A stretch of DNA of 64,000 bases, from NCBI GenBank assembly GCA_002269645.1, contig NIVC01001493.1, forward strand, positions 124,001-188,000. Reading direction: 5' to 3'. Made by a program: the position numbers and the translations under genes. Source of the stretch: Macrostomum lignano. Its lineage: Eukaryota. The notes under the pieces were generated by a model. It was not told the origin of the DNA. It was given only the letters and a program-made list of their open reading frames with translations, and did no database searches. Within the stretch, counting starts at the first letter, position 1; every line of letters starts with the position of its first letter. Shown here in pieces: positions 3,467 through 57,191 of this stretch.

Positions 3467-4657
3467 AGGGCGCCCCCAATCTCAGGCACGGACGCGGTAC
3501 ATGTAAAAAGGACAAACAAGTCAAGGGGTAAAGTTGCCGATATTTCGAATATTTCGACCCTTTAGCCGAAGCATCTCACAGTGCTTTGCTGGTTTGCACA
3601 AACAACAAGCAGCATCTCAGATGTGCTTGATTTCAACAGCAATTTAGAAAGCCAAACAACAGGCAGCACTCAAAGATTGTTGCTAACCAATATTTTATCA
3701 TAAGGATGCATAAATATGAGGCTAGGAAATCCTTGTATATAATTGTTCGAAAAAACTAACGTGAGAAAAGGTTAATATAGTCTGGAAAGTGAAAATTACA
3801 GGAATTTACAGCTACTGTAAGGGTATCAAGCACAAAAAGCTACATAAATTTGCAACAAAGCTAATGGCTACTTTGTAGCTCTGGTTTGCTAAAATGTTTA
3901 ACTTTTGTCACCAAAAAAAGTTGCTTTCTTCACTATTGAGTATTAAAGTTTAGTGCAGCGATCAGGTTTAGCATATAGGAATGTCAAAACAAAGACCTGC
4001 AGTGATAAGCATGAAGAGAAACTGCAAATTGAGTTCAAGAAGGAGAGGGAGAAAGGAAAACGGTCAGCTGTTAAAAACACTTCAAAATGACAAAAGAAAC
4101 GGCCATTTCCTGTAGGCGTTGCTGCGCCATGCACCAACCTAAACCTAAGCTGGTGGGGCCTGAATTGAAAATCTGTGTCTGGACAAAATTAGGCTTGAAA
4201 ATCATTGGGATCGTGACCCGATAAATCAATAAATGCAGCAGCTGACCTGCAGGAAATGTGATCCACAGTTTGGAGCTCAGCTGGATATCAGACACTCAAA
4301 CGTTTTCATCGAGTACGATTGCAATGTTTTGAGTTCGGGTCTCGCTAGCGCAGGCCTGCTGGCAAATTGTTCGTGCGGTACAAAACTAAATAGAGGGTTA
4401 AATTATAAGCCTTTTAAAGCTTCTGATAGTAAGCCACAGTTGCGGAAGCTCTAAACTTAATCCCTACTCACCCAGAACTGATAAATAAACAAAATATAAT
4501 TACCTACTAACGCAAGGCTAAACAGTCCATTTTAATCTTCGGTGTTTGGATTAAGTTCAAGTGTAGTAATTATTTAGTCCCTAAGACGGCGGTCTTTGTT
4601 TCTCTTTAATGTACTTCAATTCTTTTTAATTCAACTGCATGGAAGTTACGTTGAAAG

Positions 4658-5758
4658 TCAGTTGAAAATCAGGCACTCAAACGTCTTCATCGAATACGAT
4701 ATAACAAGTGCGCTACCAGATCCAGATGCATGAAGATAGTAATAGATTCCCTGTGAATTAATATTGGGATGCTCTTTGTAGACTCCGTTCGGGTCCATGA
4801 ATGCACACTGCCCGTACCACCAACCAGCCTGCCTGTTCTGTGCGCAGCTGCCTCCGCTCGAGTTGTCATTGTCGGAGTCCGGAGTGCTGAACTGCCAGTT
4901 GTTCGGTGAGTAGTTCGCATAAGTCCGCTGTCCGACACTCGACCTGCTCGCGTCCAGAGGTCCCATCGAGCACCTGTACTTGTCGCTCGCTGGGCCAACA
5001 GAGAACGGAGCATTCTCAGCCCAGTACCAGGTGCCGTTCCAGTCGCTGAACTCCCAGCGGACTCTCCACACTCCGGTGGCGGTGAGCTGGTGGAGCTGCT
5101 CCAGTCCCATCCAGTAGTTGAGACTCTCGCCCTGACCGAATCCGCTCGCGTAGTCCGCCCAGTTCCGGTTGAAGCTGACGGAGCCGTCGACTCTGTGCTG
5201 GAAGGTCGTCCAGCACTTCACCGGGTTTCTCATCTGCAATGGGCGATGCGGTGCTGCATTTCGTGCACGCATATTGATGCGGTGCTGCATTTCGTGCACG
5301 CATATTGATGCGGTGCTGCATTTCGTGCACGCATATTGATGCGGTGCTGCATTTCGTGCACGCATATTGATGCGGTGCTGCATTTCGTGCACGCATATTG
5401 ATGCGGTGCTGCATTTCGTGCACGCATATTGATGCGGTGCTGCAAAGTGCAGAAGCCACAAAGCAAAGCCCAGCTCGCTCACCCACAGCTGAGACAGGCT
5501 GGAGTCGCTGGCGTGCCGACACTTCCTGCAGGCGTCCATCGCTCCCCGATCGCAGGCCAGCAGCGAGCAGGAGCCCGAGGCCGCGTCGAAGCGGACGGCA
5601 TCCGCGTTCTCAGCAAGCATCGTACAGTGAATGTCGCTGATGGCCAGCTTCACCGCCAGCACCCGGTACTCGGCGAGGTCGCCTCGGTGGCGCTCCCAGC
5701 CGGAGTTTGCGGCCGTTGCAGTCGCCATGACAGCGCAGATGATGAGCAAAGCATGCAT
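4658..5758 (-). CDS. Secreted fibrinogen-related protein with an N-terminal PAN/apple-like module, 2 exons, ~283 aa
   Basis: Exon 1 5758-5483 (signal peptide; Cys-containing RFDAASGSCSLL module; donor TGG|GTGAGC). Exon 2 5233-4658 (acceptor ttgcag|ATG). Fibrinogen C-domain motifs WTTFQHRVDGSVSFNRNWADYASGFG, YWMGLEQLHQLT, FSTPDSDNDN, CAQNRQAGWWYGQC. Confidence 0.9.
   Translation of the reverse strand: MHALLIICAVMATATAANSGWERHRGDLAEYRVLAVKLAISDIHCTMLAENADAVRFDAASGSCSLLACDRGAMDACRKCRHASDSSLSQLWVSELGFALWLLHFAAPHQYACTKCSTASICVHEMQHRINMRARNAAPHQYACTKCSTASICVHEMQHRINMRARNAAPHRPLQMRNPVKCWTTFQHRVDGSVSFNRNWADYASGFGQGESLNYWMGLEQLHQLTATGVWRVRWEFSDWNGTWYWAENAPFSVGPASDKYRCSMGPLDASRSSVGQRTYANYSPNNWQFSTPDSDNDNSSGGSCAQNRQAGWWYGQCAFMDPNGVYKEHPNINSQGIYYYLHASGSGSALVISYSMKTFECLIFN
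5245..5444. repeat. 31-bp minisatellite (~6.4 copies) in the fibrinogen-gene intron
   Basis: Unit ATGCGGTGCTGCATTTCGTGCACGCATATTG. Confidence 0.95.
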
Positions 5759-15330: not shown

Positions 15331-18300
15331 TGATCTCGCGGTGATTGAGCTCCGTAGCATTGAACCAGTGAACTTGTAGTTTCGACGTAATTGGTACCTA
15401 TGAAAGGTCTAAGTGTCAACAAAACTCTGAGTGGAATTGATTTTTATAATGCCGCGGCATTTCGCTATTGCACATGTATTTGTAATTGTGTGAGGTTTAC
15501 TCAGATAGTGTTGGGAAGCCGGCGAAAAAAGCATTTATAAGTTTACAAAAATATCTAATGTTGCTGTAATAGATTGAGTCTTTTTTCATTACGTGAACAT
15601 GCAGTCAGATGCTTTTCTCGGATCAATCTGGTGCATACTGACCCACAAGCTACATACAGTACATGCGCACTCTATATAGCTCACTGTAGACTCGTATAGG
15701 TTAGACAGCGTCACGACAATCTGGCAGTTTTGATTAAATTATAACTCCAAAAATATACTGCTGTACACACGAGCTACGTTGGCCAGCGTTTACAATATCT
15801 ATCGACGTCGCTTACAAAGATGTACTTTTATATTATTACATCGATGGATAACGATGATGTCATATACATGGATAAACTGAACGTCGGTGCAATGTGGTCT
15901 GACTTGCCGACGTCTAATTGATGTACCGGGTCTCTAGAAACTTATTCCCCTTAATCTGCATTTTGCTAACATGATGACTAAAGGTATGATGACTGAAGTA
16001 AGATTGCAGGGTCAGATGGGGGTCGCGTTATCTGCGGGTGAGGATAGCGTGGGTCCTGGTAAGAGCGCAATTTAACCGTCTGACGAGAAGGGGGCGCGCC
16101 GCTGCTAGCTGAGATATGTATTTATCATATGATATTTATATTTTTGAAGGGAACAAACCCAGGATGGCTATACGAAAACAAGCTCCGCTCTGATTGGGTG
16201 AGCTCCAGACCCCAAATACCTCCCTCCATCGGGCAACATCACGGATCCCATGGAACTTGAGAGGCAACGATAAAGCTACGTACATGTAGTATAAAGGCAT
16301 CCGGCCTGCTGGCACTGAAAAAAACACAAGTGACAGTTTCGGGCCCACAAATCATAGCTGAAAGTAAAGCAAGGAAAGTTAAGCTGAGTGAGCAGAGGTA
16401 AACTGCAATTAACGATTGCGAGTAGGGCGAAGAAAATTTAGGCACATGTACTGCATGTCAGTGTGACAGTGTTGACTTAGTTGTAAAATGTCATTAATTG
16501 TTTTTACTGTGAGTAGACTTACGTAAATGTATTATATTTTGTATAACTTCTGTGTACATTCTTGCATCGACTAATTTTATATATCGGCAAGTGATAAATT
16601 TCTAACAAATCGATAATTTTGCCCAGCGCCCATCGTAACTTCCAGCCAATCATAATTCACTGTACCATCTATCGTTTGATCTATTATAACTCGTTTTTCG
16701 TCCGCTACTCAAAAAACTTGGCCAACTCAGCAAGCTAAATATATCGCTTCTTGGACTACTACTTTGCATATTCTGTTCTGTTCAGTCTTGTCCTGTCAAG
16801 GACTGCTACGCTGCGCTAGATTAATTCGTCACATAACAACATGGTAAAGTTTTTTATTGTACATTAATATTCTTACTGGCAAACAGTGTCGTGTGAGGGG
16901 CGGCATGCTTTGCATACTGTAATACCCTTCGGCCGGTTAGGTTTGATTTGCGGCTGCACTGGGTGCTCGATCAAGCTAGCTGCCGCATACGTCCGACCGC
17001 ATGGACGTCTTGGCCCAAGAATCATAAAAGGCATATTTTTGATCGTATTATATAATTAGAATTGGCAGCAGGTTGACTTTTAGAAGGCTAAACAACACGG
17101 CAAAAACAATTCGTATAATATATTATACATGAATACATGTAGATCCATACAAACAAAAACCGGCTATCTATAAATTAAAAAGGGAAGAACAAGCCTCAGA
17201 ATCATAAAAAGATCGAAAAACCTAAACTATCCTACGAGTACCAATAGTATGAGAAAAGTATGAGAAAAGGAGATAGAAACTCTAAGATAAAAAAGCGGAA
17301 TCATCAACTGAATTTACCAACGAAGTAATAATTCACTGTAAGATATAATTGTACGTAAAACAAGAAATTGGTCACCAAAGCAGTTAACGTTAGACTTTAG
17401 AAAGCAAAACAATAGCTTTTACGAAATAAAAAAACTGATTTATACTTTGAAACTGATTTACGAATAGGTACTGTCAACATTTAGCTAGCAATCTTTAGTA
17501 CAGCTTTGTTTAATGTAGCATGATAATTCCCGCGAAATTGAAAACGAAGAAATATTTTTGAAGGCTGTGATGTACTGATGATAATTATGTATAGTTTTCG
17601 AATATCGATCTGTCATCTGAATATCGATCGGGAAACAAATGCGTATAATAATACGGTCCAGCATGGAATGTAAATATTTTTTGGCTCCCCGCCTAGAAAA
17701 GTGAGGGTTCCGTCACTGTCGGCGCCGACCCCAGTTCAAAAATCCTGAACTGACCACTGTAAATGCAAGATAGGCGATAGGCCTACCGACTGCGCCTGTC
17801 ATCTGTGACTGAGACTGTGAGTGTAACCCTGTGACTGACGTCTGTCTGACTGCTGTAGCCGTAGCGGACCTAATCGGGCTAATGTCAATGAGTAATGTTA
17901 ATAATTACTTCGTATTTTTCTATAGGCCTAGGCCTATCTATGAAGATTAGAGCCCATGCCTTGTACCAGACAGAGCCCTGTGCATCAGGGTGATGAGGAA
18001 GAGGAACCTGTAGTCTAAGTCAGTCTTGTAGGCCTACTTCAGTACTTGTAGTGCTTCCATACTAGCTTATATCTAGGCCTATTTTACGAGTATACGAGTA
18101 TTTTACGATTTTGCAATGTAGGGTAGGCCTTAGGGCATTGTAGGCCCTATAACAATCTGATTATTAGGATAGGCTAGATGATTGTCAAATGTCAAGTTCT
18201 GTTCATTAAATTATATTGACTGTGTTTAAAATTTTGATATTGACTTATATATAATGTAGGGGCCTAGGCAGTAGGCCTAGGCCTAGTAACAAGGTCCAAA

Positions 18301-18427
18301 GAATAAAATAGGCAAATATATCACAGTCATAGCAAATCATCTATTGGTGGCCTGCCTAGCAGCTGTGGCAGCTAATGCTGCATTAGTATAGACCTAGTAG
18401 CTAGTAGGCCTATAATTCTTGCTATTT

Positions 18428-19225
18428 GGCACCAAGAAACCCAGTAAAATGCGGAATTCACAATGGAATTGGAATAGAATAGCATAGACCATAGTAAAAT
18501 GTAGAATCCACAATAAAATGGTAAATTATGGAATCAATTGCAAAAATCCACTAACTTGAACAAAGTAAAATGCAAAATATAGGCCTAGGTCCTAGGAATA
18601 AAAAAATTGAATTATAAATATATATAGCTTTGCCTATATCAATGTAAATATGAGAAAGATATATAAAGAAATTTTAATATGATTCTATATCAAAGCAAAT
18701 TGAAATAATAATAGTGCATCTATTAGGTGTACTCAAAGTAATAAATTTAAGTACTTTGTTCTTGTAAATAATAGGCTATAGCTGATAGATATATAAAATA
18801 TTACCTTAATTTTCTCTCTAATACTTTGGTCAAATTTTAAAGGCTTTTTTATTAAAATATATTTATAGTTCATAGCATGCTTGGGTGCAACCTAGGGATT
18901 CACCTGGCCGTTTCTATTGGCAACACACACATGTAAGTCACTATTGGACAGAATAGTAGTCACGTGACTGCTCTCAGCCAATAGCAACTTACATGTGTGT
19001 GTTGCCAATAGAAATGGCTGGGTGAATCCCTAGGTTGCGCATGTATGGTTCATAGGCCTAATGTGCTTTAGCTACCTAGGCCCTAGTCCTACCCTATATT
19101 TGCATTTTAATTAAAGTTAGTAACATCTGCAATTCATTCTATATTACTATTCCACTGCATTTTCTGCATTTTATTAAGCTATTCCATTCTGATTTTGCTG
19201 CAGATTTTACATTTTACTAGGTGCC
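18428..19225. mobile_element. Possible decayed TIR element hosting the 172-bp MITE
   Basis: Left GGCACCAAGAAACCCAGTAAAATGCGGAAT; reverse complement of the right end GGCACCTAGTAAAATGTAAAAT. Both arms are built of AAAATG(C/T)(G/A)GAAT subrepeats. No convincing TSD. Confidence 0.4.
18876..19047. mobile_element. Palindromic MITE (172 bp) with 8-bp TSD
   Basis: TSD GTTCATAG at 18868-18875 and 19048-19055; hairpin arms 18887-19038 centred on GTCACGTGAC; right TIR GTTGCGCATGTATG is shared with the 19251-19548 element. Confidence 0.88.
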
Positions 19226-19250
19226 ATAAATCAGTTAGTATAGTTCTAAT

Positions 19251-19548
19251 CATATATGCGCAACAGTCGGCCAAGTCGGCCGATCCGGCCGACTGATTTG
19301 GCAGCCAACCAAGGAAGTCGCAAAATTGCCAACCCTAATAAATACCCAAGTAGTAGTACTAAGTAGCTGACGAGGCATTTCAGCCTTATAAGACAGTCAT
19401 AGTTACTCCCATCGTTTACCTAAAGTTGCGTTAATTTTGCTTTAGGGTTTTTTTACATGTAAGTGGCATTTTTGGCCAAAAACTATGTCGCATTTTTGTT
19501 AAAACTAAGTCGCACGGCCGACCGAATTTTGGAAGTTGCGCATGTATG
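19251..19548. mobile_element. MITE (298 bp), CAT-terminal TIRs, 8-bp TSD (P-element- or hAT-like)
   Basis: TIRs CATATATGCGCAAC / GTTGCGCATGTATG (13/14 match); TSD GTTCTAAT at 19243-19250 and 19549-19556. Confidence 0.9.
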
Positions 19549-20100
19549 GTTCTAATCTAGGTGTCTCTTACCTAAAAAGAGTCCTTCCAAATAAATATTT
19601 AAACAAATAATAGAACTTGACAATTGTTGATTTTTATAGCCTATCCCCTTATAAATATTTTTGTATTATGCAATATAACAAATTTATATAATGCATCTAC
19701 AAATTTGTACTAGCCTAGCTATTTGACTTTTAGGGCCACTATGACAAGTTCTTATAGTTGTAATATTATATCATAGTATATATATACCATTTTGAAATCT
19801 AAGCCTTAGCTAGAACTAAAGCTAAATCAATGTATATGGAAGGATATAGAAGGGATAGGCTATTATGATCTAGGTTTATTTTTTGTCAAAATTGTTATGC
19901 CATTTGGAATAATAGCATCAAAATTGTTATGCCATTTTTTATTTTGACATGTCATGGCATGTCTATGACACAAAAAACCCAGATTATGATTCTATTACCA
20001 AATTAAAATTGAATATATAAGCCTAGGCGTAGTCTATTACAAAAGTACTAAAGTGTTAGTTAATAGGCCTAATTACTAAAATAGGCAAAATCTAATTTGA

Positions 20101-20270
20101 TTGCCTTTTTGGTTTTTTTTTCTTTTCCTTTTTCTCTTATATTTTCTTTTTCCCTTCTTTTTTGCCCCCTTTTCTCTCCTTTTCCCCTTCCTTTCTCTTT
20201 CTTTTTCCCTTTTTCCTTTTCCTTATTCTCATTTTCTCATTTTTTCTTTCTTTATATATCTCTTCTTATA
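20101..20270. repeat. Polypyrimidine low-complexity tract
   Basis: T/C-rich ~170 bp. Confidence 0.85.
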
Positions 20271-20699
20271 TTGTTGAAGTAGGCCTAGCTTAAGTTAAAA
20301 TCTCCATTTCCTATTGAGATCTTTTATGAGGGTGATAGCTTATTTAACAGGTTGTTTCCAAAAAGCCTCCTTTGTAATATAGCCTTCTTTGACAGTAGCA
20401 AAAGCTGAATGGCTTCCTCATTGGCTTCATTTATTTTAATTAAAGCATAATCAACAATAAATAATGTCAATAGTAAAAATGTTATTGAGTCCTTGACCCT
20501 AAGGACTTATAAGCTCTCTTTGCAATGAAAATAAAAACATTTATTTTAACTTTAGTCTTCTTTTCCATTCCAATCCCAGTATATATATAGTGCCAAAAAT
20601 TTGTCTTTGTTACTTAAGTCCCTGATTTAAAAAATTTAAAAGCTGTCTTTGCATGAAAGTAAAAACATTTATCTTAACATTAGCCTTTATACTATCTAA

Positions 20700-21120
20700 T
20701 AATAATGTGCATATGGCAATCTTGCTATAGACATGATACAGTATTCTAGCATTGGCACTTAGCTAACAAGTGCTATTTAAAGCTATAGCATATGCAGGGT
20801 TGCTATGGTAATATAGCTCTATTGACTAGCTCTAGCTGTTGGCCTCTACTTCTGCAATTTCTACTACTTGAGCAATTTCTTTTGCCTTTTCCAATGTCAA
20901 GGTATTGATAGCCAATAACCACTTTTGCACTTATAGCTCATAGAGTCTGCTGACAAAGCAGTCAAATAGTGGATCTTCTAGAAAAGTCCCAAAGTAATAG
21001 GTCTTTGACTAGACTTTGGAAGGTAGCCAGAAACTGCATATCCAGCTTTATCTTTCTGAATTTATTTGTAAAAGCAAAAATTCTTAGCAATAAAGCTAGC
21101 TTCTTTGGCTAGAAATGGTC
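20700..21120 (-). pseudogene. Hypermutated Ty3/Gypsy gag remnant with zinc knuckle
   Basis: Minus-strand frames read HF*PKK..FIAKNFCFYK*IQ, QFLATFQSL.SKTYYFGTFLEDPLFDCFVSRLYEL*VQKWLLAINTLTLEKAKEIAQVVEIAE and CICYSFK*HLLAKC. These match the Gypsy gag pattern IAERFxFYKRxQ...CxFGxFLExxLRDRFVxGL...QKRLLAxxxLTLEKAxEIA and CX2CX4HX4C. Confidence 0.75.
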
Positions 21121-22963
21121 TTTGAGTAGCTTTACCAACCCTGTAAGACTAGTCAAAAGGCTTCTTTGGCAAGCACAGATTTGGCAAGTCAGGAAACTAC
21201 CTTAATTTTGGTTTTCATTCTTGATTCTGTTTGTGCTTATATAGAAGGCTATATGCTCTATCAATCTTTCCCCTTTTGAAAGGGTTCAACTATATTGATA
21301 ATGGAGATCCTTGACACTACTATAGAGATTTAGCTCTGAATTAAAAAGACAATTTATATGTGCATTAGACTATATATAATAAAGTTTGTAATTGCTTATA
21401 GAGGCACTAGGCCCTAAGGCTATTTTATTTATTCCACTGCTCCCTTGCTAATGGAACATAATCTGATAGGCATTTAATTGTTTAGGGAGGATGCAAAGTG
21501 CAAATTGACAGACTTATATATTAGACTTATATATATATATTGGCTGAATAGTGATTACCATATAGCCAAATAGACTAATGTCTAATGGGACTATGGAGTG
21601 CAAGTCATAGATAGACAGACTATGCATATAAAATTCAAAAAGACTCAAATCTCAATTAAAAATTCAAATTCAAAAGAAAATATAAAAAATAGGAACAAGT
21701 CAGTGTTAGTTGGTCAAATTGAGCCATTATCAATTGCCTATCCACTAAGGCAATAAAGGACATATATAAATATATAGCTAAACCACTTTACTTGTTGCAG
21801 AGATACAACCAAAAATTCTATCTAATAAATTTATGATGATTTGTTGATAGGCTGCCATTGACTGATGCTATTCAACTTTGCTCTTAAAATGATAAAACTT
21901 AACTATTATACTATTTATTTACAAAAAAATCTCTGTTAAAATAGAATGTAACTTTCTTTTGAAAACCAAATCTATGCAAATGCAATCACTTAGAGACAAT
22001 TTTGGCCTTAGATAGTCTGAATTTAATTTTGTATAAGAATTAGACCCTAAGATTTTAAAATTAAATTTTAAATTGAAGAACTTTAAGAAGAAACTTTAAG
22101 AACTTTAAATTTTTAAATTGAAGTTCTGCTTGTTTCTTTTGAACTAGACTTTGTTCAAAATAGGAGGTAAATTATCAAAAGAGTCTATTTATAAATATCT
22201 ATAGTACTACAGATATAAAGAATCTTTATCAACTTAATATATAGAAAACAATTGCCTGCATTTACTTGCCAAATTGCATTCTATTATTGCATTATATCTT
22301 TGCTATTCTAGCATGTTGTATGATCATTTACCCTACTATCTTTACCCTACTATTAATATGCCTAAATACCATCACCTTTGCTATATGCTAACACCTCTAC
22401 AAAGTTAGACATTGCCATTTTTTCAGTGGATTAGTGGTTAGTGCTGTTATTCTAATTTCCAAAATTTTGTTATTGACTACTTTAGTAGACTATTATTTTA
22501 AGTCCAAATTAGTAAAAGCTTTGCTAATTCATTGTCCTTTTATTTTGCCATTTTTTATTTATTCTCTAAAAATTGTTTTTTATTTGTTATTTCTACTATT
22601 TCAAAATAAATAAAGAGAACAAGACTAAATAGTGCAGCAGCATAATCTGAAAAAATATGTCTTTTTTTAAATTCCAATATAAATATGTGCTTTAGATCTT
22701 AGATGCAAGAAAAGTCATATGCCATCAAAATATTACAACATTCTATGTTTGTATGTTAATTGTTAAAGCTATAACAAAAGAAGCTATACAAATGTAAACA
22801 TACTCATTTAAATATATTTAATTGGATTCATGTTAATTTGAAAAGTCAACTTCAAGTGAGACACAAGGCCAATATTGTGCCTTTAGTGGCATTGTAAGAA
22901 ATTGACTTGGTTGGCCAACTATTCAAGCCTTGCAGTTGAGAGAATTAATAATTAGTGAAACAT

Positions 22964-25900
22964 ATGGAGGCTGGGGGTGCCGGCTCTAGCACCGAAGACT
23001 TGGTTGATTCGGCCATACAGGAGTCTGCAGCGGTGGCCTCGCTTCGCTATCTAAATAGCTCAACAGGTTCCACTAATCAGCAGTCAATGTCTTCCCAGCG
23101 TCCGAAAGCGGCAAAGCCAAGAAATCCGTTTCTTGAAGAAGAAGAAGACTTTGATAGTAAAAGCGACATAGGCGATGCTAGTGCTACTCATGTACAGTTT
23201 CAGCAGCAGCTGCAGCAAAACGCGCAACAATCTCAGTTGCAGAAGCAACAAGAAAGCAAAGTATCTGTGCATAAGTTTGCCGAATATTTGTTAACAAACA
23301 AATTCTATTTAACCGCCTTGGAGTACCATGCCGAACTGTGCGAGCGCGGCGAGCCGCAGGTGCCGAGATTGGCGAATTTCTTTAGTAATCCGGGAAATTT
23401 CGAATCCACTTATTGGCCAGCCTTGGACAGCCACGCTGGCGGACACGGTTCCGGCCGGATGCAACGATCGCCGAGCGTCACCACCTTCGATTCCATGGAT
23501 GCGGCTAGAAACTCGGACAATGGCGATCAGGCCACTGACGAACGCGTCCCTGTGTTAGAATTCGAGCTGAGAAAAGCTCGAGAAACGATTGCTAGCTTGC
23601 GGCAGGAGCTCACTAATAAGGCTAAATCCTTGCTGCAGCCTCATCGACTGTCTGAGGAGGATCCAGACGCTGCCTCGGCCGCTGCCACTGGAGGAGCAGC
23701 TGGAGGCGCAGTTGTCGGTGGTGCCAATGAAGGTGACGAGACTGACAGCGAAAGGCAGGCCAGTTCTTCAGCTAACGAGCCAATCCAAAGTCACGAGAAG
23801 CGCGTATTGAACTTTCTAATTTACGAGTACCTGCTGCAGATGGATTATAAGTACACGCCGGCATCCTTTGCCGAAGAGAATGCCGATCAAATATTCGACT
23901 CCTGGGACGATGTCGGCTTGAATATGCCCAAGCCGAAGGATCTATTAAGGATGTTGAGATCGCAGGAGTCTGCATCAGCCGCTGCTGCTTCCGCCGCCGC
24001 TACTGCGGCGTTGCAAACTGCGGAGGCTGAATGTCAGACAGATCCAGATGAGCAGCGGTTGGCTTGGGAACGGGAGCGTGTTGAACTGCGCGAACGAACC
24101 GAAGAGCTGGAGGAATTAGTTGATCAGCTCAAGGCTGAGTCGGCTGCTAGTAAACAGCGTATGCTCAAGCTGGAAAATGACTTGCATAGAGCCAGGTAGC
24201 CTTTTTTATTTGTATCCTGGGGAATTTTTAAGCCTCAGAATCAAATAATATACTTAAAATCTCTCTCTATCCTACTCTTTACACTGCTAAGCCTCTGACT
24301 CACAGGTTGCTAACTCAGTGGGAGAGGTTGCTAACTCAGAGGTTGCTAACTCAGTGGGAGAGGTTGCTAACTCAGAGGTTGCTAACTCAGTGGGAGAGGT
24401 TGCTAACTCAGAGGTTGCTAACTCAGTGGGAGAGGTTGCTAACTCAGAGGTTGCTAACTCAGTGGGAGGTTGCTAACTCAGTGAGAGAGGATGCTAACTC
24501 AGTGGGAGAGGTTGCTAACTCAGTGGGAGAGGTTGCTAACTCAGTTGGAGAGGTTGCTAACTCAGTGAGAGAGGTTGCTAATTTAGTGGGAGAAATTGCT
24601 AACCCAGAGAGAGGTTGTTAACTCAGTGAGAGAGGTGGCTAACTCAGTGGGAGAGGTTGCTAACTCAGTGAGAGAGGTTGCTAACACAGTGGGAGAGGTT
24701 GCTAACCCAGAGAGAGGTTGTTAACTCAGTGACAGAGGTTGCTAACTCAGTGAGAGAGGTTGCTAACTCAGTGAGAGAGGTTGCTAACTCAGTGAGAGAG
24801 GTGGCTAACCCAGTTGTAGGGATTGCTAGCCCAGTAGATCTGGCTTATTTGCCCTCTCAGAGTCAGAAAGTTAAGCAGAATAGACCGTGGTTAGTACGCA
24901 GCTCTTGCTTAACTTGTTTTTTAACAGATCTACAAACAAACAGATTAACAGATTAACAAAAGGTGACAGATCCGTCTGTCACCTTGTGATTATAAAAGTA
25001 TAATTTATAATTTTTATTGTGTTTATCGGGTCTGGACTTATAAACTATAAACCCGTGCACAATTAATCCAACAGGTCCAACATGGTGTCTACTAAGAGCA
25101 AAAGATCAGACACCGCAGGCACAGCCAATAGCGACGGCTCCGGATCTGCTTCGATTAATCGCGAAGTTGACGAACTCATGGAAGATGAAGAGCCCAGCTT
25201 CACCGCCACGTCTCGCTCGGTGCCTCAGTTATTTATCAGACAACTGTACCAGTCTGTGCTGCCGTTCCGTCTAGAGGAGAGCTTGGTTACCATGGGAACC
25301 AGTCCAGAGGAGCTGGTCCGCATTCTTGGCCACGTGCTGCCCTGTCTCATACCGGGCGTGCTGTTTGACTATCGGCATCTAGCAGTGCCGCTGGCGGTTC
25401 ACACGGCCTGCCTGCACCCGGACTCCGGAGCCCGAGACCAACTGCTTCGCCTGTTGTTTAACATGACCAAAACTCCCGATAGGAAGCAGAGAAATGAAAT
25501 TCTAGAAGGCTGTTTAAGCTTCGCTAAAAGTGTCGGGCCTAGCCGGATTGAAGCGGAACTGCTGCCTCAGATCTGGGAACAGTTGGGTCACAAGGCCGAC
25601 TCAAGGCGGCTGCTTGTTGTTGAAGCCTGCGCCACTTTGCTGCCATTTCTGCCAGCCACTCTGCGCGACTCTCTTGTGCTCAGCATGCTGCAGCAGATGT
25701 TTGAAGAGGAGCGCACCGCGGAAGTTCGTTGCGCTATTATCCGGACATTGTCTCTGTTGTCCTGCTATATTGAGGATCGGGATAAATTCCCAGCGATTGC
25801 AAAGATTTTAATTGCCTGTCTAACGGACGGGACTAGCGAGTCTATATCGGAGACTACAGCTGATTTCCTGTTGCCAGCTGTGGCCAGCTGGGCGCTGGAG

Positions 25901-28900
25901 CTGGGATGCTTGCACACTGGCTTGATCGATCCTATGCTAGACCGATTGGATAGCTCTCTGCGTCAGCTGCCCAGCGTCTCGGAGGCGTTGCAATTGTCTC
26001 GACTGTTGCAATTGTTGCGACTGTTGGTGCCGTTTGTAGTTGTCTGGATTGTCAGGCACTTGCCGCAGAGTTCAGGTTGGTGTACATGCCTAACGATGCA
26101 TGGGGTGCATCCAGGCATCCGGGCTGAGATCCAAGGTGCACTCTGTTCTGACTGTTCACCGGTGTCTCAGCCCGGCTGTTCACCGGGATCTCAGCCCGGC
26201 TGTTCACCGGGATCTCAGCCCGTCTTGTTCACTGGGATCTCAGCCCGGCTGTTCACCGGGATCTCTGCCCGTCTTGTTCACCGGTGTCTCAGCCAGGCTG
26301 TTCACCGGGGTCTCAGCTAAGCTGTTCACCGGGGTCTCAGCCAGGCTGTTCACCGGGATCTCAGCCCGGCTTGTTCACCGGGATCTCAGCCCGTCCTGTT
26401 CACCGGGGTCTCAGCCAAGCTGTTCACCGGGATCTTATCCCTGCTGTTCACTGGGATCTCAGCCCTGTTATTTACCGGGATCTCAGCCCGGCTGTTCACC
26501 GGGATCTCCGCTCGTCTTGTTCACCGGGGTCTCAGCCAAGCTGTTCACCGGGATCTCAGCCCTGCTGTTCACTGGGATCTCAGCCCGGCTGTTCACCGGG
26601 ATCTCTGCCCGTCTTGTTCACCGGGATCTCAGCCCGGCTGTTCACCGGTAGCTCAGCCCGTCTTGTTCACCGGTGTCTCAGCCAGGCTGTGAACCGGCGT
26701 CTCAGCTAAGCTGTTCACCGGGGTCTCAGCCCGTCCTGTTCACCGGGGTCTCAGCCCGGCTGTTCACCGGGATCTCCGCCCGTCTTGTTCACCGGGGTCT
26801 CAGCCAAGCTGTTCACCGGGATCTCAGCCCTGCTGTTCACTGGGATCTCTGCCCGTCTTGTTCACCGGGATCTCAGCCCGGCTGTTCACCGGTAGCTCAG
26901 CCCGTCTTGTTCACCGGTGTCTCAGCCAGGCTGTGAACCGGCGTCTCAGCTAAGCTGTTCACCGGGGTCTCAGCCAGGCTGTTCACCGGGATCTCAGCCC
27001 GGCTTGTTCACCCGGATCTCAGCCCGTCCTGTTCACCGGGGTCTCAGCCAAGCTGTTCACCGGGATCTTAGCCCTGCTGTTCACTGGGATCTCAGCCCTG
27101 TTGTTTACCGGGATCTCAGCCCGGCTGTTCACCGGGGTCTCAGCCCGGCTTGTTCATCGGGGTCTCGCCAAATCAAGACAATTAAATCTAGTGTATTTAA
27201 AAGTACACTGGGGCAAATGTGAAGCAGAACTGGCCATAGACAACTTGGGCCGGGCATGTGTGTAAACATTTTCGTACTAACTAAAATTAACACTTTGTTT
27301 GTTTCCTGACTTACTATTAGTAGTATTATATCGTCTATTTATTTCTAACAGGCTATGGACAGCAGCAACAACAGCAACAGAAAAATCTGTTCCGCTCAGC
27401 AGTAGAGCAATCAGCTGTTTCTTCAAGCAATGGCGAATCAAATTCCATCTCAGGCGGGGCGGCATCGTCTGCGGTTGTTGCTTCGGCCAATCAGAGTCGA
27501 CCGAATCTCTACGCTTATGACCTTATTTGTCCTAGCTTTGCTTTGTACAGCCAGGCCTTACACTGCTACTGCAGTCAGCCGGCTTGGGAAGCCTGGTCCG
27601 AGGCCGCCTACATCAATGCCCGCCTAGCGCCGGGCCTCCTCACAGTTCTCCAATGCCAGCATATTAACGAAGTTCACTGCTCGGCTGTTTGTCGCTTATT
27701 TGCTCAACTTTCGGCTAGTCTGGGTGTCTATTTTGTACAGCGCACCCTGATGCCGCTCATGCGGCGCCAGCTGTACGACTTGACTACTTCGCAACTGAGA
27801 TTGGACGCCTTGGAGACCTGCCTACCTGCCGGCTATTGCGTCTGCCTTTTGGCCGCCTGCAGCGAGGACGAGACTGACACCTACGAGGCCGAGTTGCGAG
27901 ATGAAGTTCATAAGGTACTTTTTCTTGTCAATTCGTTTCTTTTATCATCGTTCTCTGATTGTAGCTGAATGTGTCGTTAAATGCATCGGTATGTGTCTGT
28001 CAAAGTGTCGCCACATGTGCCGGTATGTCTCGATGTCAAAGTGTCGCTAAATGTGTCGGTATGTCTCGATGTCAAAGTGTCGCTAAATGTGTCAGTATGT
28101 CTCGATGTCAAAGTGTCGCTAAATGTGTCGGTATGTCTCGATGTCAAAGTGTCGCTAAATGTGTCGGTATGTCTCGATGTCAAAGGGTCGCTAAATGTGT
28201 CGGTATGTCTCGATGTCAAAGGGTCGCTAAATGTGTCAGTATGTGTCGATGTGAAAGAGTCCCTCATGTGTCGATGTCGAAGTGTCGCTAAATATTTCGG
28301 TTATGTCGATCAAAAGTAGTCGAATGTCGGTAAAGATACATTCATATAGGTGCCGCTACACTGATTAATGCATATCAAAATTGTTGTCGTGTGCTCCACA
28401 GGTGCTCCTAGACGGTGTCGCAGCGCTAGCCAACAGTAAACGCCGCCTAAACGGTATCTGCGCCTGTCTTAAAGAACTGTGCAGCTGCCTGCCTAGCGGT
28501 AGCGGCGAGCGAGCTGCCCTTCGTCTACTGTGGGACTGCATCGTTCTTCCAGAAGCAACTGTCGAACTACGGTCAGCCTGTTGCCGGCTGTGCAACGCTT
28601 TAGTGCACAGCACAGAGAATGAAGCTACAATAGGCGAGACAGTGAAAGCTTTGGTCACCCTGGCATCGGATTCGTCAAGTGCAGTACGCCGAGCCTGTGT
28701 GAAACCACTGGGCTCGATTTTAACGCTGGCTAAATCGGCCGAACTGTTAGACAAAGTGCGGGTGCAGACTAGCGAGATCCTGTTCGACCCGGGCCCTGAT
28801 GACGACATGGAGTCCAGGATTGAGTGCGCCAACTATTGCACCGCTTTTGGGCCGAAGGTTGATCAAAGATTTCGCGAAGATGTCCTGCTGCCCGCGCTGG

Positions 28901-33700: not shown

Positions 33701-34825
33701 GGGCGTCGGCATCGGCGGCTGGCACCGGCGGACGACGCCGCTGAAGGCGACGGCCAGGCAGCGGCGGCGGCGGCGGCGGCCCCTCCGGTTGGGCTGTTCG
33801 AAATCGGCGCTGGTCCCAAGGGGCGAGGCGACGAGGCCGGCGGCGGCTCTAGCAGGCTGTCCAGTAAGTCGATTGTCTGATCCCATTTATCCCCTCTCTA
33901 CTCACCTGTCTGATCCCATTTATCCCCTCTCTACTCACCTGTCTGATCCCATTTACCCCCTCTCTACTCACCTGTCTGATCCCATTCATCCCCTCTCTAC
34001 TCACCTGTCTGATCCCATTTACCCCCTCTCTACTCACCTGTCTGATCCCATTTACCCCCTCTCTACTCACCTGTCTGATCCCATTTACCCCCTCTCTACT
34101 CACCTGTCTGATCCCATTTACCCCCTCTCTACTCACCTGTCTGATCCCATTTATCCCCTCTCTACTCACCTGTCTGATCCCATTTATCCCCTCTCTACTC
34201 ACCTGTCTGATCCCATTTATCCCCTCTCTACTCACCTGTCTGATCCCATTCATCCCCTCTCTACTCACCTGTCTGATCCCATTTATCCCCTCTCTACTCA
34301 CCTGTCTGATCCCATTCATCCCCTCTCTACTCACCTGTCTGATCCCATTTATCCCCTCTCTACTCACCTGTCTGATCCCATTTATCCCCTCTCTACTCAC
34401 CTGTCTGATCCCATTTATCCCCTCTCTACTCACCTGTCTGATCCCATTTATCCCCTCTCTACTCACCTGTCTGATCCCATTCATCCCCTCTATTCTCACC
34501 TGTCTGATCCCATTCATCCCCTCTCTACTCACCTGTTTGATCCCATTCATCCCCTCTCTACTCACCTGTTTGATCCCATTCATCCCCTCTCTACTCACCT
34601 GTCTGATCCCATTCATCCCCTCTATTCTCACCTGTCTGATCTCATTCATCCCCTCTATTCTCACCTGTCTGATCTCATTCATCCCCTCTCTACTCACCTG
34701 TTTGATGCCATGTTTCTCTGCTGTCTGATTTAGTCTAAATCCGGTTATTAACATACAACATTTCAGAATTGCCACCGTTAAGAGGTGCCCAGCCGAACAC
34801 AGATGAGGCGGATCCTCTTACTTAA
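30746..34825 (+). CDS. ARL13B: ADP-ribosylation factor-like ciliary GTPase 13B, 5 exons
   Basis: Exons 30746-30801, 30944-31376, 32084-32455, 33335-33863, 34767-34825, all phase-consistent. GIDNAGKTT P-loop, DIGGS (no catalytic Gln, as in ARL13), ANKQD, MDKGIKTGLRWLL, charged coiled coil, RQ|VEPL VxP-type motif. Confidence 0.9.
31490..31960. repeat. ~21-bp pyrimidine-rich minisatellite, ARL13B intron 2
   Basis: Unit CTATCCGCTGTCTCCTTCCTT. Confidence 0.93.
32560..33275. repeat. 12/14-bp mixed minisatellite, ARL13B intron 3
   Basis: Units ACTCACTACAG-like: GACTCACTACAG and AATCTCACTACAG interleaved. Confidence 0.93.
33874..34706. repeat. 33-bp minisatellite (~25 copies), ARL13B intron 4
   Basis: Unit CTGTCTGATCCCATTTATCCCCTCTCTACTCAC. 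Confidence 0.97.
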
Positions 34826-57040: not shown

Positions 57041-57191
57041 TCAATTTCAAAGCGGCATGATATGTAGAAAATCTACTTTAATCGGTAGAATTTTATTTAA
57101 ACTGACACAACTAATCATTTTTTATTCATGCAATCTCTACACTGAACCAAGTCTTGCAATTTAAACCGTGCTCAAAAAACTCCCAACTAAC

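What the first reader, a model, noticed from the sequence alone, without database searches (positions are those of the whole stretch)
18108..22980. Sharply bounded ~4.9-kb CpG-erased domain with a CpG and apparent CpA C>T spectrum (RIP-like or dense-methylation scar) abutting the gene cluster
Seen: outside two MITEs I count only 2 CpG in ~4.9 kb (1 in 19557-22980); dozens would be expected at roughly 30% GC. The equally AT-rich 15400-17900 region, the solo LTR, the LINE fragments and all genes keep abundant CpG. The right edge is abrupt: CpG resumes 17 nt after the RELCH ATG. Paralogous subrepeats show the path directly: GTAAAATGCGGAATTCAC (18444-18461) versus GTAAAATGTAGAATCCAC (18494-18511), i.e. 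CG>TA. Words in which C is followed by a pyrimidine (AGGCCT, TAGCTA, AAGCTT) are frequent. Known: 5mC deamination gives CG>TG/CA, while fungal RIP adds CpA>TpA. Inference: a locus-confined, transposon-targeted cytosine hypermutation process acting on CpG and CpA. I know of no RIP-like system described in animals.
Basis: partly seen in the sequence, partly recalled or inferred. Interest (0 to 1): 0.85.

Follow-up and report, generated by a model that had tools for sequence, protein, structure and literature searches.

The report
CpG-erased 5-kb block upstream of RELCH
A sharply bounded 5-kb stretch of non-coding animal DNA just upstream of the RELCH start codon has lost about 95% of its CpG sites, most likely as a scar of dense cytosine methylation rather than a fungal-style RIP system, and it is a curiosity worth a genome-wide follow-up.

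Summary
Without its two MITEs, the block 17908-22954 has 6 CpG where about 100 are expected (P about 6e-35). One 2,953-nt run has none. Flanking AT-rich DNA and RELCH exon 1 sit at CpG o/e of about 1, and every other long CpG-free gap in the window is a minisatellite.

The block has no ORF or protein-domain relic and no paralogue elsewhere in the window. Its left 2.2 kb is a nest of foldback and hAT-like MITE elements. A 10-nt direct repeat, TTAATAATTA, sits at both edges (chance about 0.01), so it may be one discrete inserted unit.

Internal paralogues show CpG-type decay: six CA-versus-TG double mismatches. No 1-kb window meets RIP index thresholds.

The expected TpG/CpA products are missing, and CAG is replaced by TAG. 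A model with a weaker CpA component fits best, but only if the ancestor resembled the flanking DNA. CpG much stronger than CAG/CAC is the known preference of DNMT3-type methyltransferases.

Best reading: a dense-methylation deamination scar confined to one unit. A RIP-like system is not needed and not shown. Methylation, DNMT genes, the species and other family copies could not be tested.

The parts
17680..17897 (.). CpG-rich flank (GC about 0.47) directly left of the block. It may be the RELCH promoter or 5' leader.
   Evidence: Abundant CpG up to 17875 and 17911. The promoter role is inference only.
17898..17907 (+). Left copy of the 10-nt direct repeat TTAATAATTA, at the left CpG-defined edge.
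   Evidence: Longest exact match between the two edges. Chance is 20/3000 in Markov resamples and 50/3000 in real window pairs.
17908..22944 (.). The CpG-erased, non-coding, AT-rich block (GC 0.30).
   Evidence: 6 CpG versus about 100 expected without the MITEs. No ORF longer than 61 aa. No Pfam family at E<=1 in six frames. No paralogue elsewhere in the window. No Rfam family or tRNA.
17912..20096 (.). Part A: a nest of non-autonomous elements, rich in the palindrome TAGGCCTA.
   Evidence: 12 of the window's 13 TAGGCCTA copies lie in 17778-20288. Inverted repeats and MITEs are present.
18440..18600 (+).
   Evidence: Aligns to the reverse complement of 19045-19210 with 100/149 identical, 33 transitions and 16 transversions. 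There are four CA-versus-TG and one CG-versus-TA double mismatches.
18876..19047 (.). MITE1, a palindromic hAT-like MITE with a perfect 8-bp TSD (GTTCATAG at 18868-18875 and 19048-19055). It is partly CpG-decayed (3 CpG, o/e 0.32).
   Evidence: The five mismatched positions of the 61-nt arms are all CpG-type: TG/CA twice and CG/CA once.
19045..19210 (-). Right arm of the old foldback.
19252..19549 (.). MITE2, with the same terminal sequence as MITE1 and a perfect 8-bp TSD (TTCTAATC at 19244-19251 and 19550-19557). Its CpG is intact (16 CpG, o/e 1.15).
20097..20262 (+). Polypyrimidine (CT-rich) tract separating parts A and B.
20263..22944 (.). Part B: 2.7 kb of anonymous AT-rich DNA (GC 0.30) with no CpG at all.
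   Evidence: Only tiny tandem duplications are present. One 81-nt internal duplicate exists, 20480-20559 and 20608-20687.
22934..22939 (+). A possible 3' splice acceptor (ttgcag). With a possible donor (GTAATG) at 17893-17898, the block could be a 5'-UTR intron.
   Evidence: Sequence inspection only. There are no transcript data.
22945..22954 (+). Right copy of the direct repeat TTAATAATTA.
22964..24199 (+). RELCH first coding exon (LisH motif). CpG resumes at 22981 and o/e is about 1.

Best explanation
The block is one discrete, about 5.05-kb, non-coding unit. Its left part is a nest of foldback and MITE elements, and its right part is anonymous AT-rich DNA. It sits between a CpG-rich flank and the RELCH start codon.

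The unit has been densely cytosine-methylated in the germ line, while its neighbours were not. Deamination of 5-methylcytosine turned about 95% of its CpGs into TpG/CpA. That loss alone accounts for the fall in GC from 0.36 to 0.30.

The methylation was probably of the de novo (DNMT3) type. That type also marks CAG and CAC weakly, which would explain the partial replacement of CAG by TAG.

The razor-sharp edges are the ends of the unit (10-nt direct repeats), not a chromatin gradient. MITE1 landed early enough to lose most of its CpGs. MITE2 is recent or exempt.

Shown: the CpG void, its edges, the direct repeat, the MITE insertions, the CpG-type mismatches between paralogues, the failure of the RIP indices, and the CAG-to-TAG shift.

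Inferred: methylation itself, the enzyme type, action in the germ line, decay in place, the unit being an insertion, and any intron role.
For: CpG is 6 versus about 100 expected, while GpC density is unchanged (42-44 per kb in block and control). That singles out the CpG dinucleotide rather than C or G in general.

Paired copies inside the block differ mainly at former CpGs. CA/TG is the commonest adjacent double mismatch (6), with one CG/TA and one CG/CA. The outer arms of MITE1 have no other difference.

(CpA+TpG)/(ApC+GpT) rises from 1.16 in control to 1.35-1.49. Simulated CpG decay of control DNA gives 1.50.

The second-order shifts match the methylation axis described across 753 vertebrate genomes: AG/CT goes from 1.02 to 1.26 and AC/GT from 0.91 to 0.72.

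A simple equilibrium model with CpG-only hypermutability of 30-100x gives rho(CG) of 0.07-0.02 and GC of 0.309. The block shows about 0.05 and 0.304.

The CpA-context loss ranks CAG as strongest, CAC and CAT as weaker, and CAA as unchanged. DNMT3 enzymes deposit non-CpG methylation mostly at CAG and CAC (PMC7736785).

The direct repeat at both edges has p of about 0.01.

Transposon-directed methylation with CpG loss is documented in some invertebrates (PMC8857917).
Against: No methylation data and no DNMT genes can be checked, and the species is unknown.

The rest of the window, including other repeats and housekeeping exons, shows no CpG decay. The genome may therefore have little or no methylation.

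A rho(CG) of about 0.05, and 0.013 over the last 3.4 kb, is lower than any bulk methylated genome. At equilibrium it needs a CpG multiplier of 30-100 or more, against about 8 for mammals.

The TpG/CpA product excess expected from CpG decay is absent: rho is 1.04, against 1.2-1.3 predicted.

The AC/GT deficit and the full retention of GpC are not reproduced by any model tried.

The CpG-free trinucleotide signature of the block correlates only 0.59-0.65 with control DNA, against 0.88 +/- 0.04 for control subsets. Its ancestor may not have been control-like.

MITE2 keeps all its CpGs inside the block.

The unit has no terminal repeats or poly(A), so it matches no known element class.
Confidence: 0.55

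Rival explanations
1. Imported composition. The unit lost its CpGs somewhere else, either in a heavily methylated compartment of the same genome or in another genome. It was then inserted here recently, so nothing CpG-mutagenic happens at this locus.
For: A perfect 10-nt direct repeat lies exactly at both compositional edges. The edges are razor-sharp. The trinucleotide signature is distinct from neighbouring non-coding DNA. MITE2 is CpG-intact. Nothing else in the window is CpG-depleted. Zero CpG in 2.95 kb implies little time for new CpGs to arise.
Against: GpC density equals that of the host's own AT-rich DNA, and that DNA has an unusually high GpC o/e of 1.38. This argues for native DNA. 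MITE1 has a perfect TSD inside the block and shares termini with CpG-rich MITE2, yet it has lost most of its CpGs. That is easiest to explain if decay went on in the block after MITE1 inserted. The unit has no terminal repeats, no poly(A) and no coding relics to explain mobility. No source sequence could be found.
Confidence: 0.2
2. A RIP-like, repeat-triggered enzymatic C>T hypermutation system in an animal, acting on CpG and CpA in bursts on transposon nests.
For: CpG erasure is near-total (95-99%) and exceeds what spontaneous decay gives in known methylated genomes. The CpA component is favoured by composition modelling (chi2 31 versus 96). CAG-to-TAG replacement conserves the CAG+TAG sum in part B. 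The left part is made of inverted and direct repeats. The result is an AT-rich block next to genes, as in fungal AT-isochores.
Against: RIP product and substrate indices are 1.04 and 1.44 (composite -0.40). No 1-kb window passes the thresholds of >=1.1 and <=0.75. Neurospora RIP regions average 1.59 and 0.44. The context order, CpG much stronger than CpA, is the reverse of canonical RIP. Part B (2.7 kb) has no duplicate in the window. Paralogue mismatches show no YpA excess. MITE1 and MITE2 share termini, yet only one is mutated. RIP is described as fungus-specific (PMC7882544 abstract). DNMT3-type methylation explains the same context order without a new system.
Confidence: 0.07
3. No mutational bias at all. 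The block descends from CG-free simple sequence, meaning decayed minisatellites and microsatellites, which fill this genome, and it never had CpGs.
For: Every other long CpG-free gap in the window is a minisatellite with a CG-free unit. The block contains a CT-rich tract, (GGCCTA)n remnants and small tandem duplications.
Against: Detectable tandem structure covers under 10% of the block. DNA that has diverged beyond recognition should have regained CpGs toward the local o/e of about 1. Former CpGs are directly visible as CA/TG and CG/TA mismatches between paralogues and in MITE1.
Confidence: 0.07
4. Technical artefact. Either methylated CpGs were systematically miscalled as TpG/CpA during long-read basecalling or polishing, or the segment is a mis-joined contaminant.
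For: The void is more complete than evolutionary equilibrium predicts. Its edges are abrupt. The arms of MITE1 differ only at CpG positions.
Against: The expected surplus of TpG/CpA is absent. MITE2 in the middle keeps 16 CpGs. The old foldback arms show 33% ordinary divergence. The direct repeats at the edges and the two intact TSDs look biological. The host-like GpC density argues against contamination.
Confidence: 0.05
5. Selection against CpG in a functional non-coding element, such as a 5'-UTR intron or regulatory spacer of RELCH.
For: The block abuts the start codon. Plausible splice signals lie at both ends.
Against: No known function requires the absence of about 100 CpGs over 5 kb. 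Transposons insert freely, which suggests little constraint. Other RELCH introns keep their CpGs.
Confidence: 0.03

Closest known systems
Methylation-driven CpG decay: CpG-depleted methylated DNA of vertebrates and mosaically methylated invertebrates, and transposon-directed methylation in cnidarians (PMC8857917; bioRxiv 10.64898/2026.09.02.747768)
   Same: Loss is specific to CpG while GpC is untouched. Paralogue comparisons show CG to TG/CA changes. AG/CT goes up and AC/GT goes down as second-order marks. The effect is confined to a repeat-bearing unit next to unmethylated, CpG-replete DNA.
   Different: Depletion is far deeper: o/e of about 0.05, and 0.013 over 3.4 kb, against about 0.27 for mammals. 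It lies in a 5' spacer rather than a gene body. Neighbouring genes and other repeats show no decay at all. The TpG/CpA surplus that balances CpG loss in vertebrates is absent. Methylation itself is untested.
DNMT3-type non-CpG methylation (mCAG and mCAC; PMC7736785)
   Same: The context ranking of the apparent extra C>T loss has CpG far ahead, CAG the clearest non-CpG context, CAC and CAT weaker (CAC not significant on its own, z = -1.85), and CAA unaffected.
   Different: This is known as an epigenetic mark of vertebrate stem cells, neurons and oocytes. I know of no description of it as a lasting mutational scar in an invertebrate. Here it is inferred from composition only.
Fungal repeat-induced point mutation and RIP-made AT-isochores (Neurospora; Leptosphaeria, PMC3105345; RIP indices, PMC6714961)
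   Same: An AT-rich, gene-free, repeat-bearing block with abrupt borders sits next to GC-normal genes. It shows C>T transitions in a dinucleotide context and a possible CpA component.
   Different: RIP indices are not met (1.04 and 1.44, against thresholds of >=1.1 and <=0.75). CpG rather than CpA is the main target. GC is 0.30, against about 0.16 in Neurospora RIP regions. No duplication is seen. The organism is an animal.
RIP-like TpCpG hypermutation of transposons in Pucciniomycotina (PMC3318451)
   Same: The hypermutation centres on CpG within repetitive DNA.
   Different: The 5' T preference cannot be checked because all CpG contexts are gone and no family consensus is available. That case is fungal and defined on multi-copy elements.

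Membership tests
Fungal RIP | Depletion of CpA/TpG and gain of TpA: product index TpA/ApT >= 1.1, substrate index (CpA+TpG)/(ApC+GpT) <= 0.75, composite > 0 | tested here: not met
   The block scores 1.04, 1.44 and -0.40. None of 126 1-kb windows in the window passes. Thresholds are from PMC6714961.
Fungal RIP | Targets are duplicated sequences, and both copies are mutated | tested here: inconclusive
   There is no copy of the block elsewhere in the 64-kb window. Only short internal repeats exist. The rest of the genome is not available.
Fungal RIP | Dependence on a RID/Masc-type cytosine methyltransferase homologue and a sexual-phase trigger | not testable with these tools
   Only 64 kb of the genome is at hand.
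Pucciniomycotina-type RIP-like hypermutation | C>T concentrated at TpCpG relative to other NCG in multi-copy elements | not testable with these tools
   All CpG contexts are erased, and no family consensus exists to polarise changes.
Methylation (5mC deamination) CpG-decay domain | CpG o/e far below GpC o/e and below that of adjacent DNA of similar composition | tested here: met
   rho(CG) is 0.047 against 0.955 in control (z = -12.9). GpC is 42-44 per kb in both.
Methylation (5mC deamination) CpG-decay domain | Related copies differ by CG to TG/CA transitions | tested here: met
   Six CA/TG double mismatches, one CG/TA and one CG/CA in three paralogue pairs. The outer arms of MITE1 differ only at such sites.
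Methylation (5mC deamination) CpG-decay domain | A surplus of TpG/CpA that balances the CpG deficit | tested here: not met
   rho(CA/TG) is 1.04, against 1.06 in control and 1.2-1.3 predicted. Only the ratio to ApC+GpT rises, from 1.16 to 1.35-1.49.
Methylation (5mC deamination) CpG-decay domain | Second-order signature: AG/CT up and AC/GT down | tested here: met
   AG/CT goes from 1.02 to 1.26 (z = +6.7) and AC/GT from 0.91 to 0.72 (z = -5.5). The signature is described in bioRxiv 10.64898/2026.09.02.747768.
Methylation (5mC deamination) CpG-decay domain | 5mC present on the domain in germ cells, and DNMT1/DNMT3 encoded in the genome | not testable with these tools
   There are no reads, no methylome and no genome.
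hAT-like MITE (the two small elements) | Short non-coding element with terminal inverted repeats and an 8-bp target-site duplication | tested here: met
   The TSDs GTTCATAG and TTCTAATC are perfect. Both elements share the terminus ...GTTGCGCATGTATGG. The superfamily is inferred from TSD length only.
Transposable-element insertion (the 5-kb block as one unit) | Target-site duplication at both ends | tested here: met
   TTAATAATTA is at 17898-17907 and 22945-22954, with chance of 0.007-0.017.
Transposable-element insertion (the 5-kb block as one unit) | Class-defining termini or genes (TIR, LTR, poly(A), transposase or RT) | tested here: not met
   There is no terminal inverted or direct repeat between the ends. 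No Pfam domain appears in six frames. There is no poly(A).

The most novel reading that the evidence does not exclude
An animal genome carries a unit-confined cytosine hypermutation process, with CpG near-complete and CAG partial. It acts faster than spontaneous 5mC decay, on foldback and MITE nests and the DNA they sit in. This would be a functional analogue of fungal RIP, perhaps driven by a DNMT-like enzyme acting as a deaminase.
Probability: 0.07. Interest if true: 0.9.

Novelty: new member of a known kind. Interest (0 to 1): 0.4.

Why it matters
If the block is a methylation scar, this genome directs very dense and long-lasting germ-line methylation to a single non-coding unit. Its gene bodies and most repeats otherwise look unmethylated. 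That would be an unusually clean example of targeted genome-defence methylation in an invertebrate, with a readable CpG-plus-CAG mutational footprint.

A genome-wide map of such CpG-null blocks would show what the targeting signal is. It could be hairpin-forming repeats, new insertions, or position next to promoters. It would also show whether such scars shape AT-rich spacers next to genes.

If the erasure instead proves burst-like and repeat-dependent, it would be the first RIP-type defence outside fungi.

Tried and rejected
- **Coding relics.** I looked for transposon, viral or mitochondrial relics. There is no ORF longer than 61 aa, and no Pfam family at E<=1 in six X-masked frames.
- **RNA genes.** None found.
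- **Paralogues in the window.** I searched for copies of the block and of the MITEs to build a substitution spectrum. None exist.
- **Other MITE copies in public metagenomes.** A 27-mer found nothing. The 18-nt terminus gave 11 chance hits in mostly GC-rich contigs that share only the 18-21-mer.
- **Species and orthologous loci.** The RELCH middle exon gave no hit at 1e-5. The best hit for the BMS1 exon is 65%, to Pinctada. Exact look-ups of three window ORFs are not on record. No empty-site or allele comparison was therefore possible.
- **Decayed minisatellite origin.** Tandem structure covers under 10% of the block.
- **An early assumption of mine that proved wrong.** I assumed the TpG/CpA surplus would vanish at equilibrium. 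A simulation keeps it at 1.2-1.3, so its absence is a real anomaly.
- **Context-free extra C>T.** This fits worse than CpA-specific loss (chi2 about 60 versus 31).
- **Classical RIP indices.** Not met.

Full report
**Observation**

In 18108-22980 (4,873 nt, GC 0.314) there are 21 CpG (o/e 0.175) against 214 GpC. Nineteen of the 21 lie in two small elements. The other two are at 18452 and 20028, and CpG resumes at 22981, 17 nt after the RELCH ATG at 22964.

The gap 20028-22981 (2,953 nt, 66 CpG expected) is the longest in the window. Every other gap outside the block with 10 or more expected CpG is a minisatellite whose unit lacks CG.

Judged by CpG spacing, the block starts near 17908 rather than 18108. 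Without the two MITEs, 17908-22954 has 6 CpG against about 100 expected at the control o/e of 0.955 (Poisson 6e-35). Three of the six sit in one triplicated 8-mer.

AT-rich DNA on the left (o/e 0.95-1.01) and RELCH exon 1 on the right (1.04) are normal. The window is animal: it encodes a fibrinogen-C domain, STRIP/N1221, BMS1 and a LisH/HEAT RELCH. The housekeeping exons show no CpG decay.

**Anatomy**

The block has no ORF longer than 61 aa. It has no Pfam family at E<=1 in any of six frames, no Rfam family or tRNA, and no paralogue elsewhere in the window.

Part A (17912-20096) is a nest of non-autonomous elements.
- An old foldback has arms at 18440-18600 and 19045-19210, with 100 of 149 aligned positions identical.
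- MITE1 (18876-19047) is palindromic, with a perfect 8-bp TSD, GTTCATAG.
- MITE2 (19252-19549) has a perfect TSD, TTCTAATC, and the same terminal sequence as MITE1.
- Twelve of the window's 13 copies of the palindrome TAGGCCTA lie in 17778-20288.

A CT-rich tract (20097-20262) separates part A from part B. Part B (20263-22944) is 2.7 kb of anonymous DNA at 30% GC. It has only tiny tandem duplications and one 81-nt internal duplicate.

A 10-nt direct repeat, TTAATAATTA, lies at 17898-17907 and 22945-22954, exactly at the two CpG-defined edges. Its chance probability is 0.007-0.017. Just left of it is a CpG-rich stretch (17680-17880) that could be the RELCH promoter. A GTAATG at 17893 and a ttgcag at 22934-22939 could make the block a 5'-UTR intron. 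That is sequence inspection only.

**Mutation spectrum from paired copies**

The 61-nt outer arms of MITE1 differ at five positions, all CpG-type: TG versus CA twice, and CG versus CA once. There is no other change. The inner palindrome adds one CAG/TAG mismatch, one A/G, one transversion and two indels.

MITE1 is down to 3 CpG (o/e 0.32), whereas MITE2 keeps 16 (o/e 1.15).

I pooled the foldback arms, the MITE1 arms and the part-B duplicate. The commonest adjacent double mismatch is CA/TG (6), plus one CG/TA. This is the signature of ancestral CpGs that decayed independently in each copy.

C/T mismatches are no commoner before A (9/71) than before T (11/79). Fisher p is 0.82. The test is small and unpolarised, so its power is low.

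**RIP indices**

TpA/ApT is 1.04 and (CpA+TpG)/(ApC+GpT) is 1.44, giving a composite of -0.40. None of 126 1-kb windows passes the published thresholds of >=1.1 and <=0.75. Neurospora RIP regions average 1.59 and 0.44.

The substrate index of the block (1.35-1.49) equals what simulated CpG-to-TpG/CpA decay of control DNA predicts (1.50, up from 1.16).

**Composition beyond CpG**

As a control I used 12 kb of AT-rich, non-tandem DNA from the same window. Against it the block shows:
- AG/CT rising from 1.02 to 1.26 (z = +6.7);
- AC/GT falling from 0.91 to 0.72 (z = -5.5);
- CC/GG rising;
- CA/TG unchanged (1.04 versus 1.06);
- GpC frequency unchanged (42-44 per kb).

Rising AG/CT and falling AC/GT with CpG loss is the methylation axis reported across 753 vertebrate genomes. 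In that study a CpG multiplier of 7.9 gives rho(CG) of 0.27.

My own simple equilibrium model gives rho(CG) of 0.26, 0.07 and 0.02 for multipliers of 8, 30 and 100. It gives GC of 0.309, starting from 0.356. This matches the block's GC of 0.304, so CpG hypermutability alone explains the AT-richness. The multiplier needed, 30-100 or more, is several times the mammalian value.

**The anomaly**

The same model keeps rho(CA/TG) at 1.2-1.3. Direct decay of control DNA predicts 153 CA/TG per kb. The block has 112-116. The products of CpG decay are therefore missing.

The deficit depends on context. C/(C+T) falls as follows:
- before AG, from 0.45 to 0.20 (z = -6.1);
- before AT, from 0.36 to 0.26;
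- before AC, from 0.39 to 0.32;
- before AA, it is unchanged (0.42 versus 0.43).

In part B the CAG+TAG sum is conserved.

I ran a forward model from control DNA and scored it over the nine non-CG dinucleotides. It gives chi2 of 96 for CpG decay only, and about 60 with added context-free C>T. With CpA-specific C>T at 13-20% of the CpG rate it gives about 31.

Four points weigh against it.
- The trinucleotide signature of the block correlates only 0.59-0.65 with control, against 0.88 +/- 0.04 for control subsets.
- The AC/GT deficit and the GpC retention are unexplained by any model.
- An equilibrium CpA multiplier of 3 would push GC to 0.24, which is too low.
- The MITE1 outer arms show none of the roughly 2.6 CpA changes expected. 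That estimate is mine, and gives P of about 0.07.

**Mechanism**

A footprint in which CpG is far ahead, CAG is next, CAC and CAT are weaker and CAA is unaffected resembles de novo DNMT3-type methyltransferases. They deposit non-CpG methylation mostly at CAG and CAC (PMC7736785).

Transposon-directed methylation with CpG loss is known in some invertebrates (PMC8857917). Dense methylation confined to one unit, followed by 5mC deamination, therefore explains the void. It also explains the AT-richness, the paralogue mismatches, the second-order dinucleotide shifts and possibly the CAG-to-TAG shift, without a new system.

The direct repeats suggest that the sharp edges are the ends of an inserted unit. 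The hairpin-forming MITE and foldback nest is a plausible trigger through small RNAs. That last point is inference.

**Rivals**

- **The unit was already CpG-free when it inserted here (0.2).** This fits the perfect repeat, the sharp edges and the intact MITE2. The host-like GpC density and the decay of MITE1 inside the block count against it.
- **A RIP-like system (0.07).** It fails the indices, the context order and the duplication test available here.
- **Descent from CG-free simple sequence (0.07).** The visible former CpGs contradict this.
- **A basecalling or assembly artefact (0.05).** This cannot be excluded without reads.
- **Selection against CpG (0.03).** There is no positive evidence for it.

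**Limits**

The species could not be identified. The best BMS1 hit is 65%, and three exact look-ups failed. No other copy of any element was found in public collections. Methylation, DNMT content, family consensus sequences, allelic empty sites and raw reads all remain untested.

**Verdict**

This is a genuine, statistically extreme, locus-confined CpG void. It is best read as a dense-methylation scar on a discrete unit, with an unresolved secondary CAG/CpA signal. It is not shown to be RIP-like.

Noticed in passing
window 17778-20288: The 8-nt palindrome TAGGCCTA occurs 13 times in the 64-kb window. Twelve of these lie in this 2.5-kb stretch, where about 0.02 would be expected by composition. 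Some are tandem (GGCCTA)n and some sit at the inner ends of the foldback arms. Their origin and role are unknown.
   Followed up: partly
window-wide, e.g. 24304-24835, 26152-27171, 33874-34711, 41340-42482, 54263-57034: More than 35 minisatellite arrays with 15-40-nt units fill introns and spacers. One has 93 copies of a 30-nt unit. They account for all other long CpG-free gaps. The 24-nt array at 26152-27171 begins inside the RELCH ORF 25082-26320.
   Followed up: partly
window 5245-5444 (inside ORF 4658-5758, minus strand): A perfect 31-nt tandem repeat (6.5 copies, 100% identity) lies within the N-terminal half of the fibrinogen-C-domain ORF. Because 31 is not a multiple of 3, that part of the ORF is probably not genuine coding sequence.
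   Followed up: no
window-wide AT-rich non-coding DNA (48 control tiles): The genome has an unusually high GpC o/e (1.38) with CpG o/e of about 0.95. The exons of the housekeeping genes RELCH, STRIP and BMS1 have CpG o/e of 0.8-1.4. There is therefore no sign of the gene-body methylation decay typical of many invertebrates.
   Followed up: partly
window 3569-3958: A small non-tandem, CpG-poor patch has 1 CpG where about 11 are expected. It is the only other candidate of this kind in the window, and it is far weaker.
   Followed up: no
window 18084-18110: A triplicated TACGAGTA-like motif holds three of the six residual CpGs of the block. It looks like a recent slippage duplication of a single CpG-bearing 8-mer.
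   Followed up: no
window 17893-17898 and 22934-22939: A GTAATG and a ttgcag sit within 15 nt of the two edges of the block. They would allow the whole block to be spliced out as a 5'-UTR intron of RELCH. There are no transcript data to test this.
   Followed up: no
window 25082-26317 and 57168-58070: The RELCH middle exon found no homologue at E<=1e-5 among 5.8 billion proteins. The best match of the conserved BMS1 GTPase exon is only 65%, to a pearl oyster. The source lineage therefore seems unrepresented in the protein collection.
   Followed up: partly
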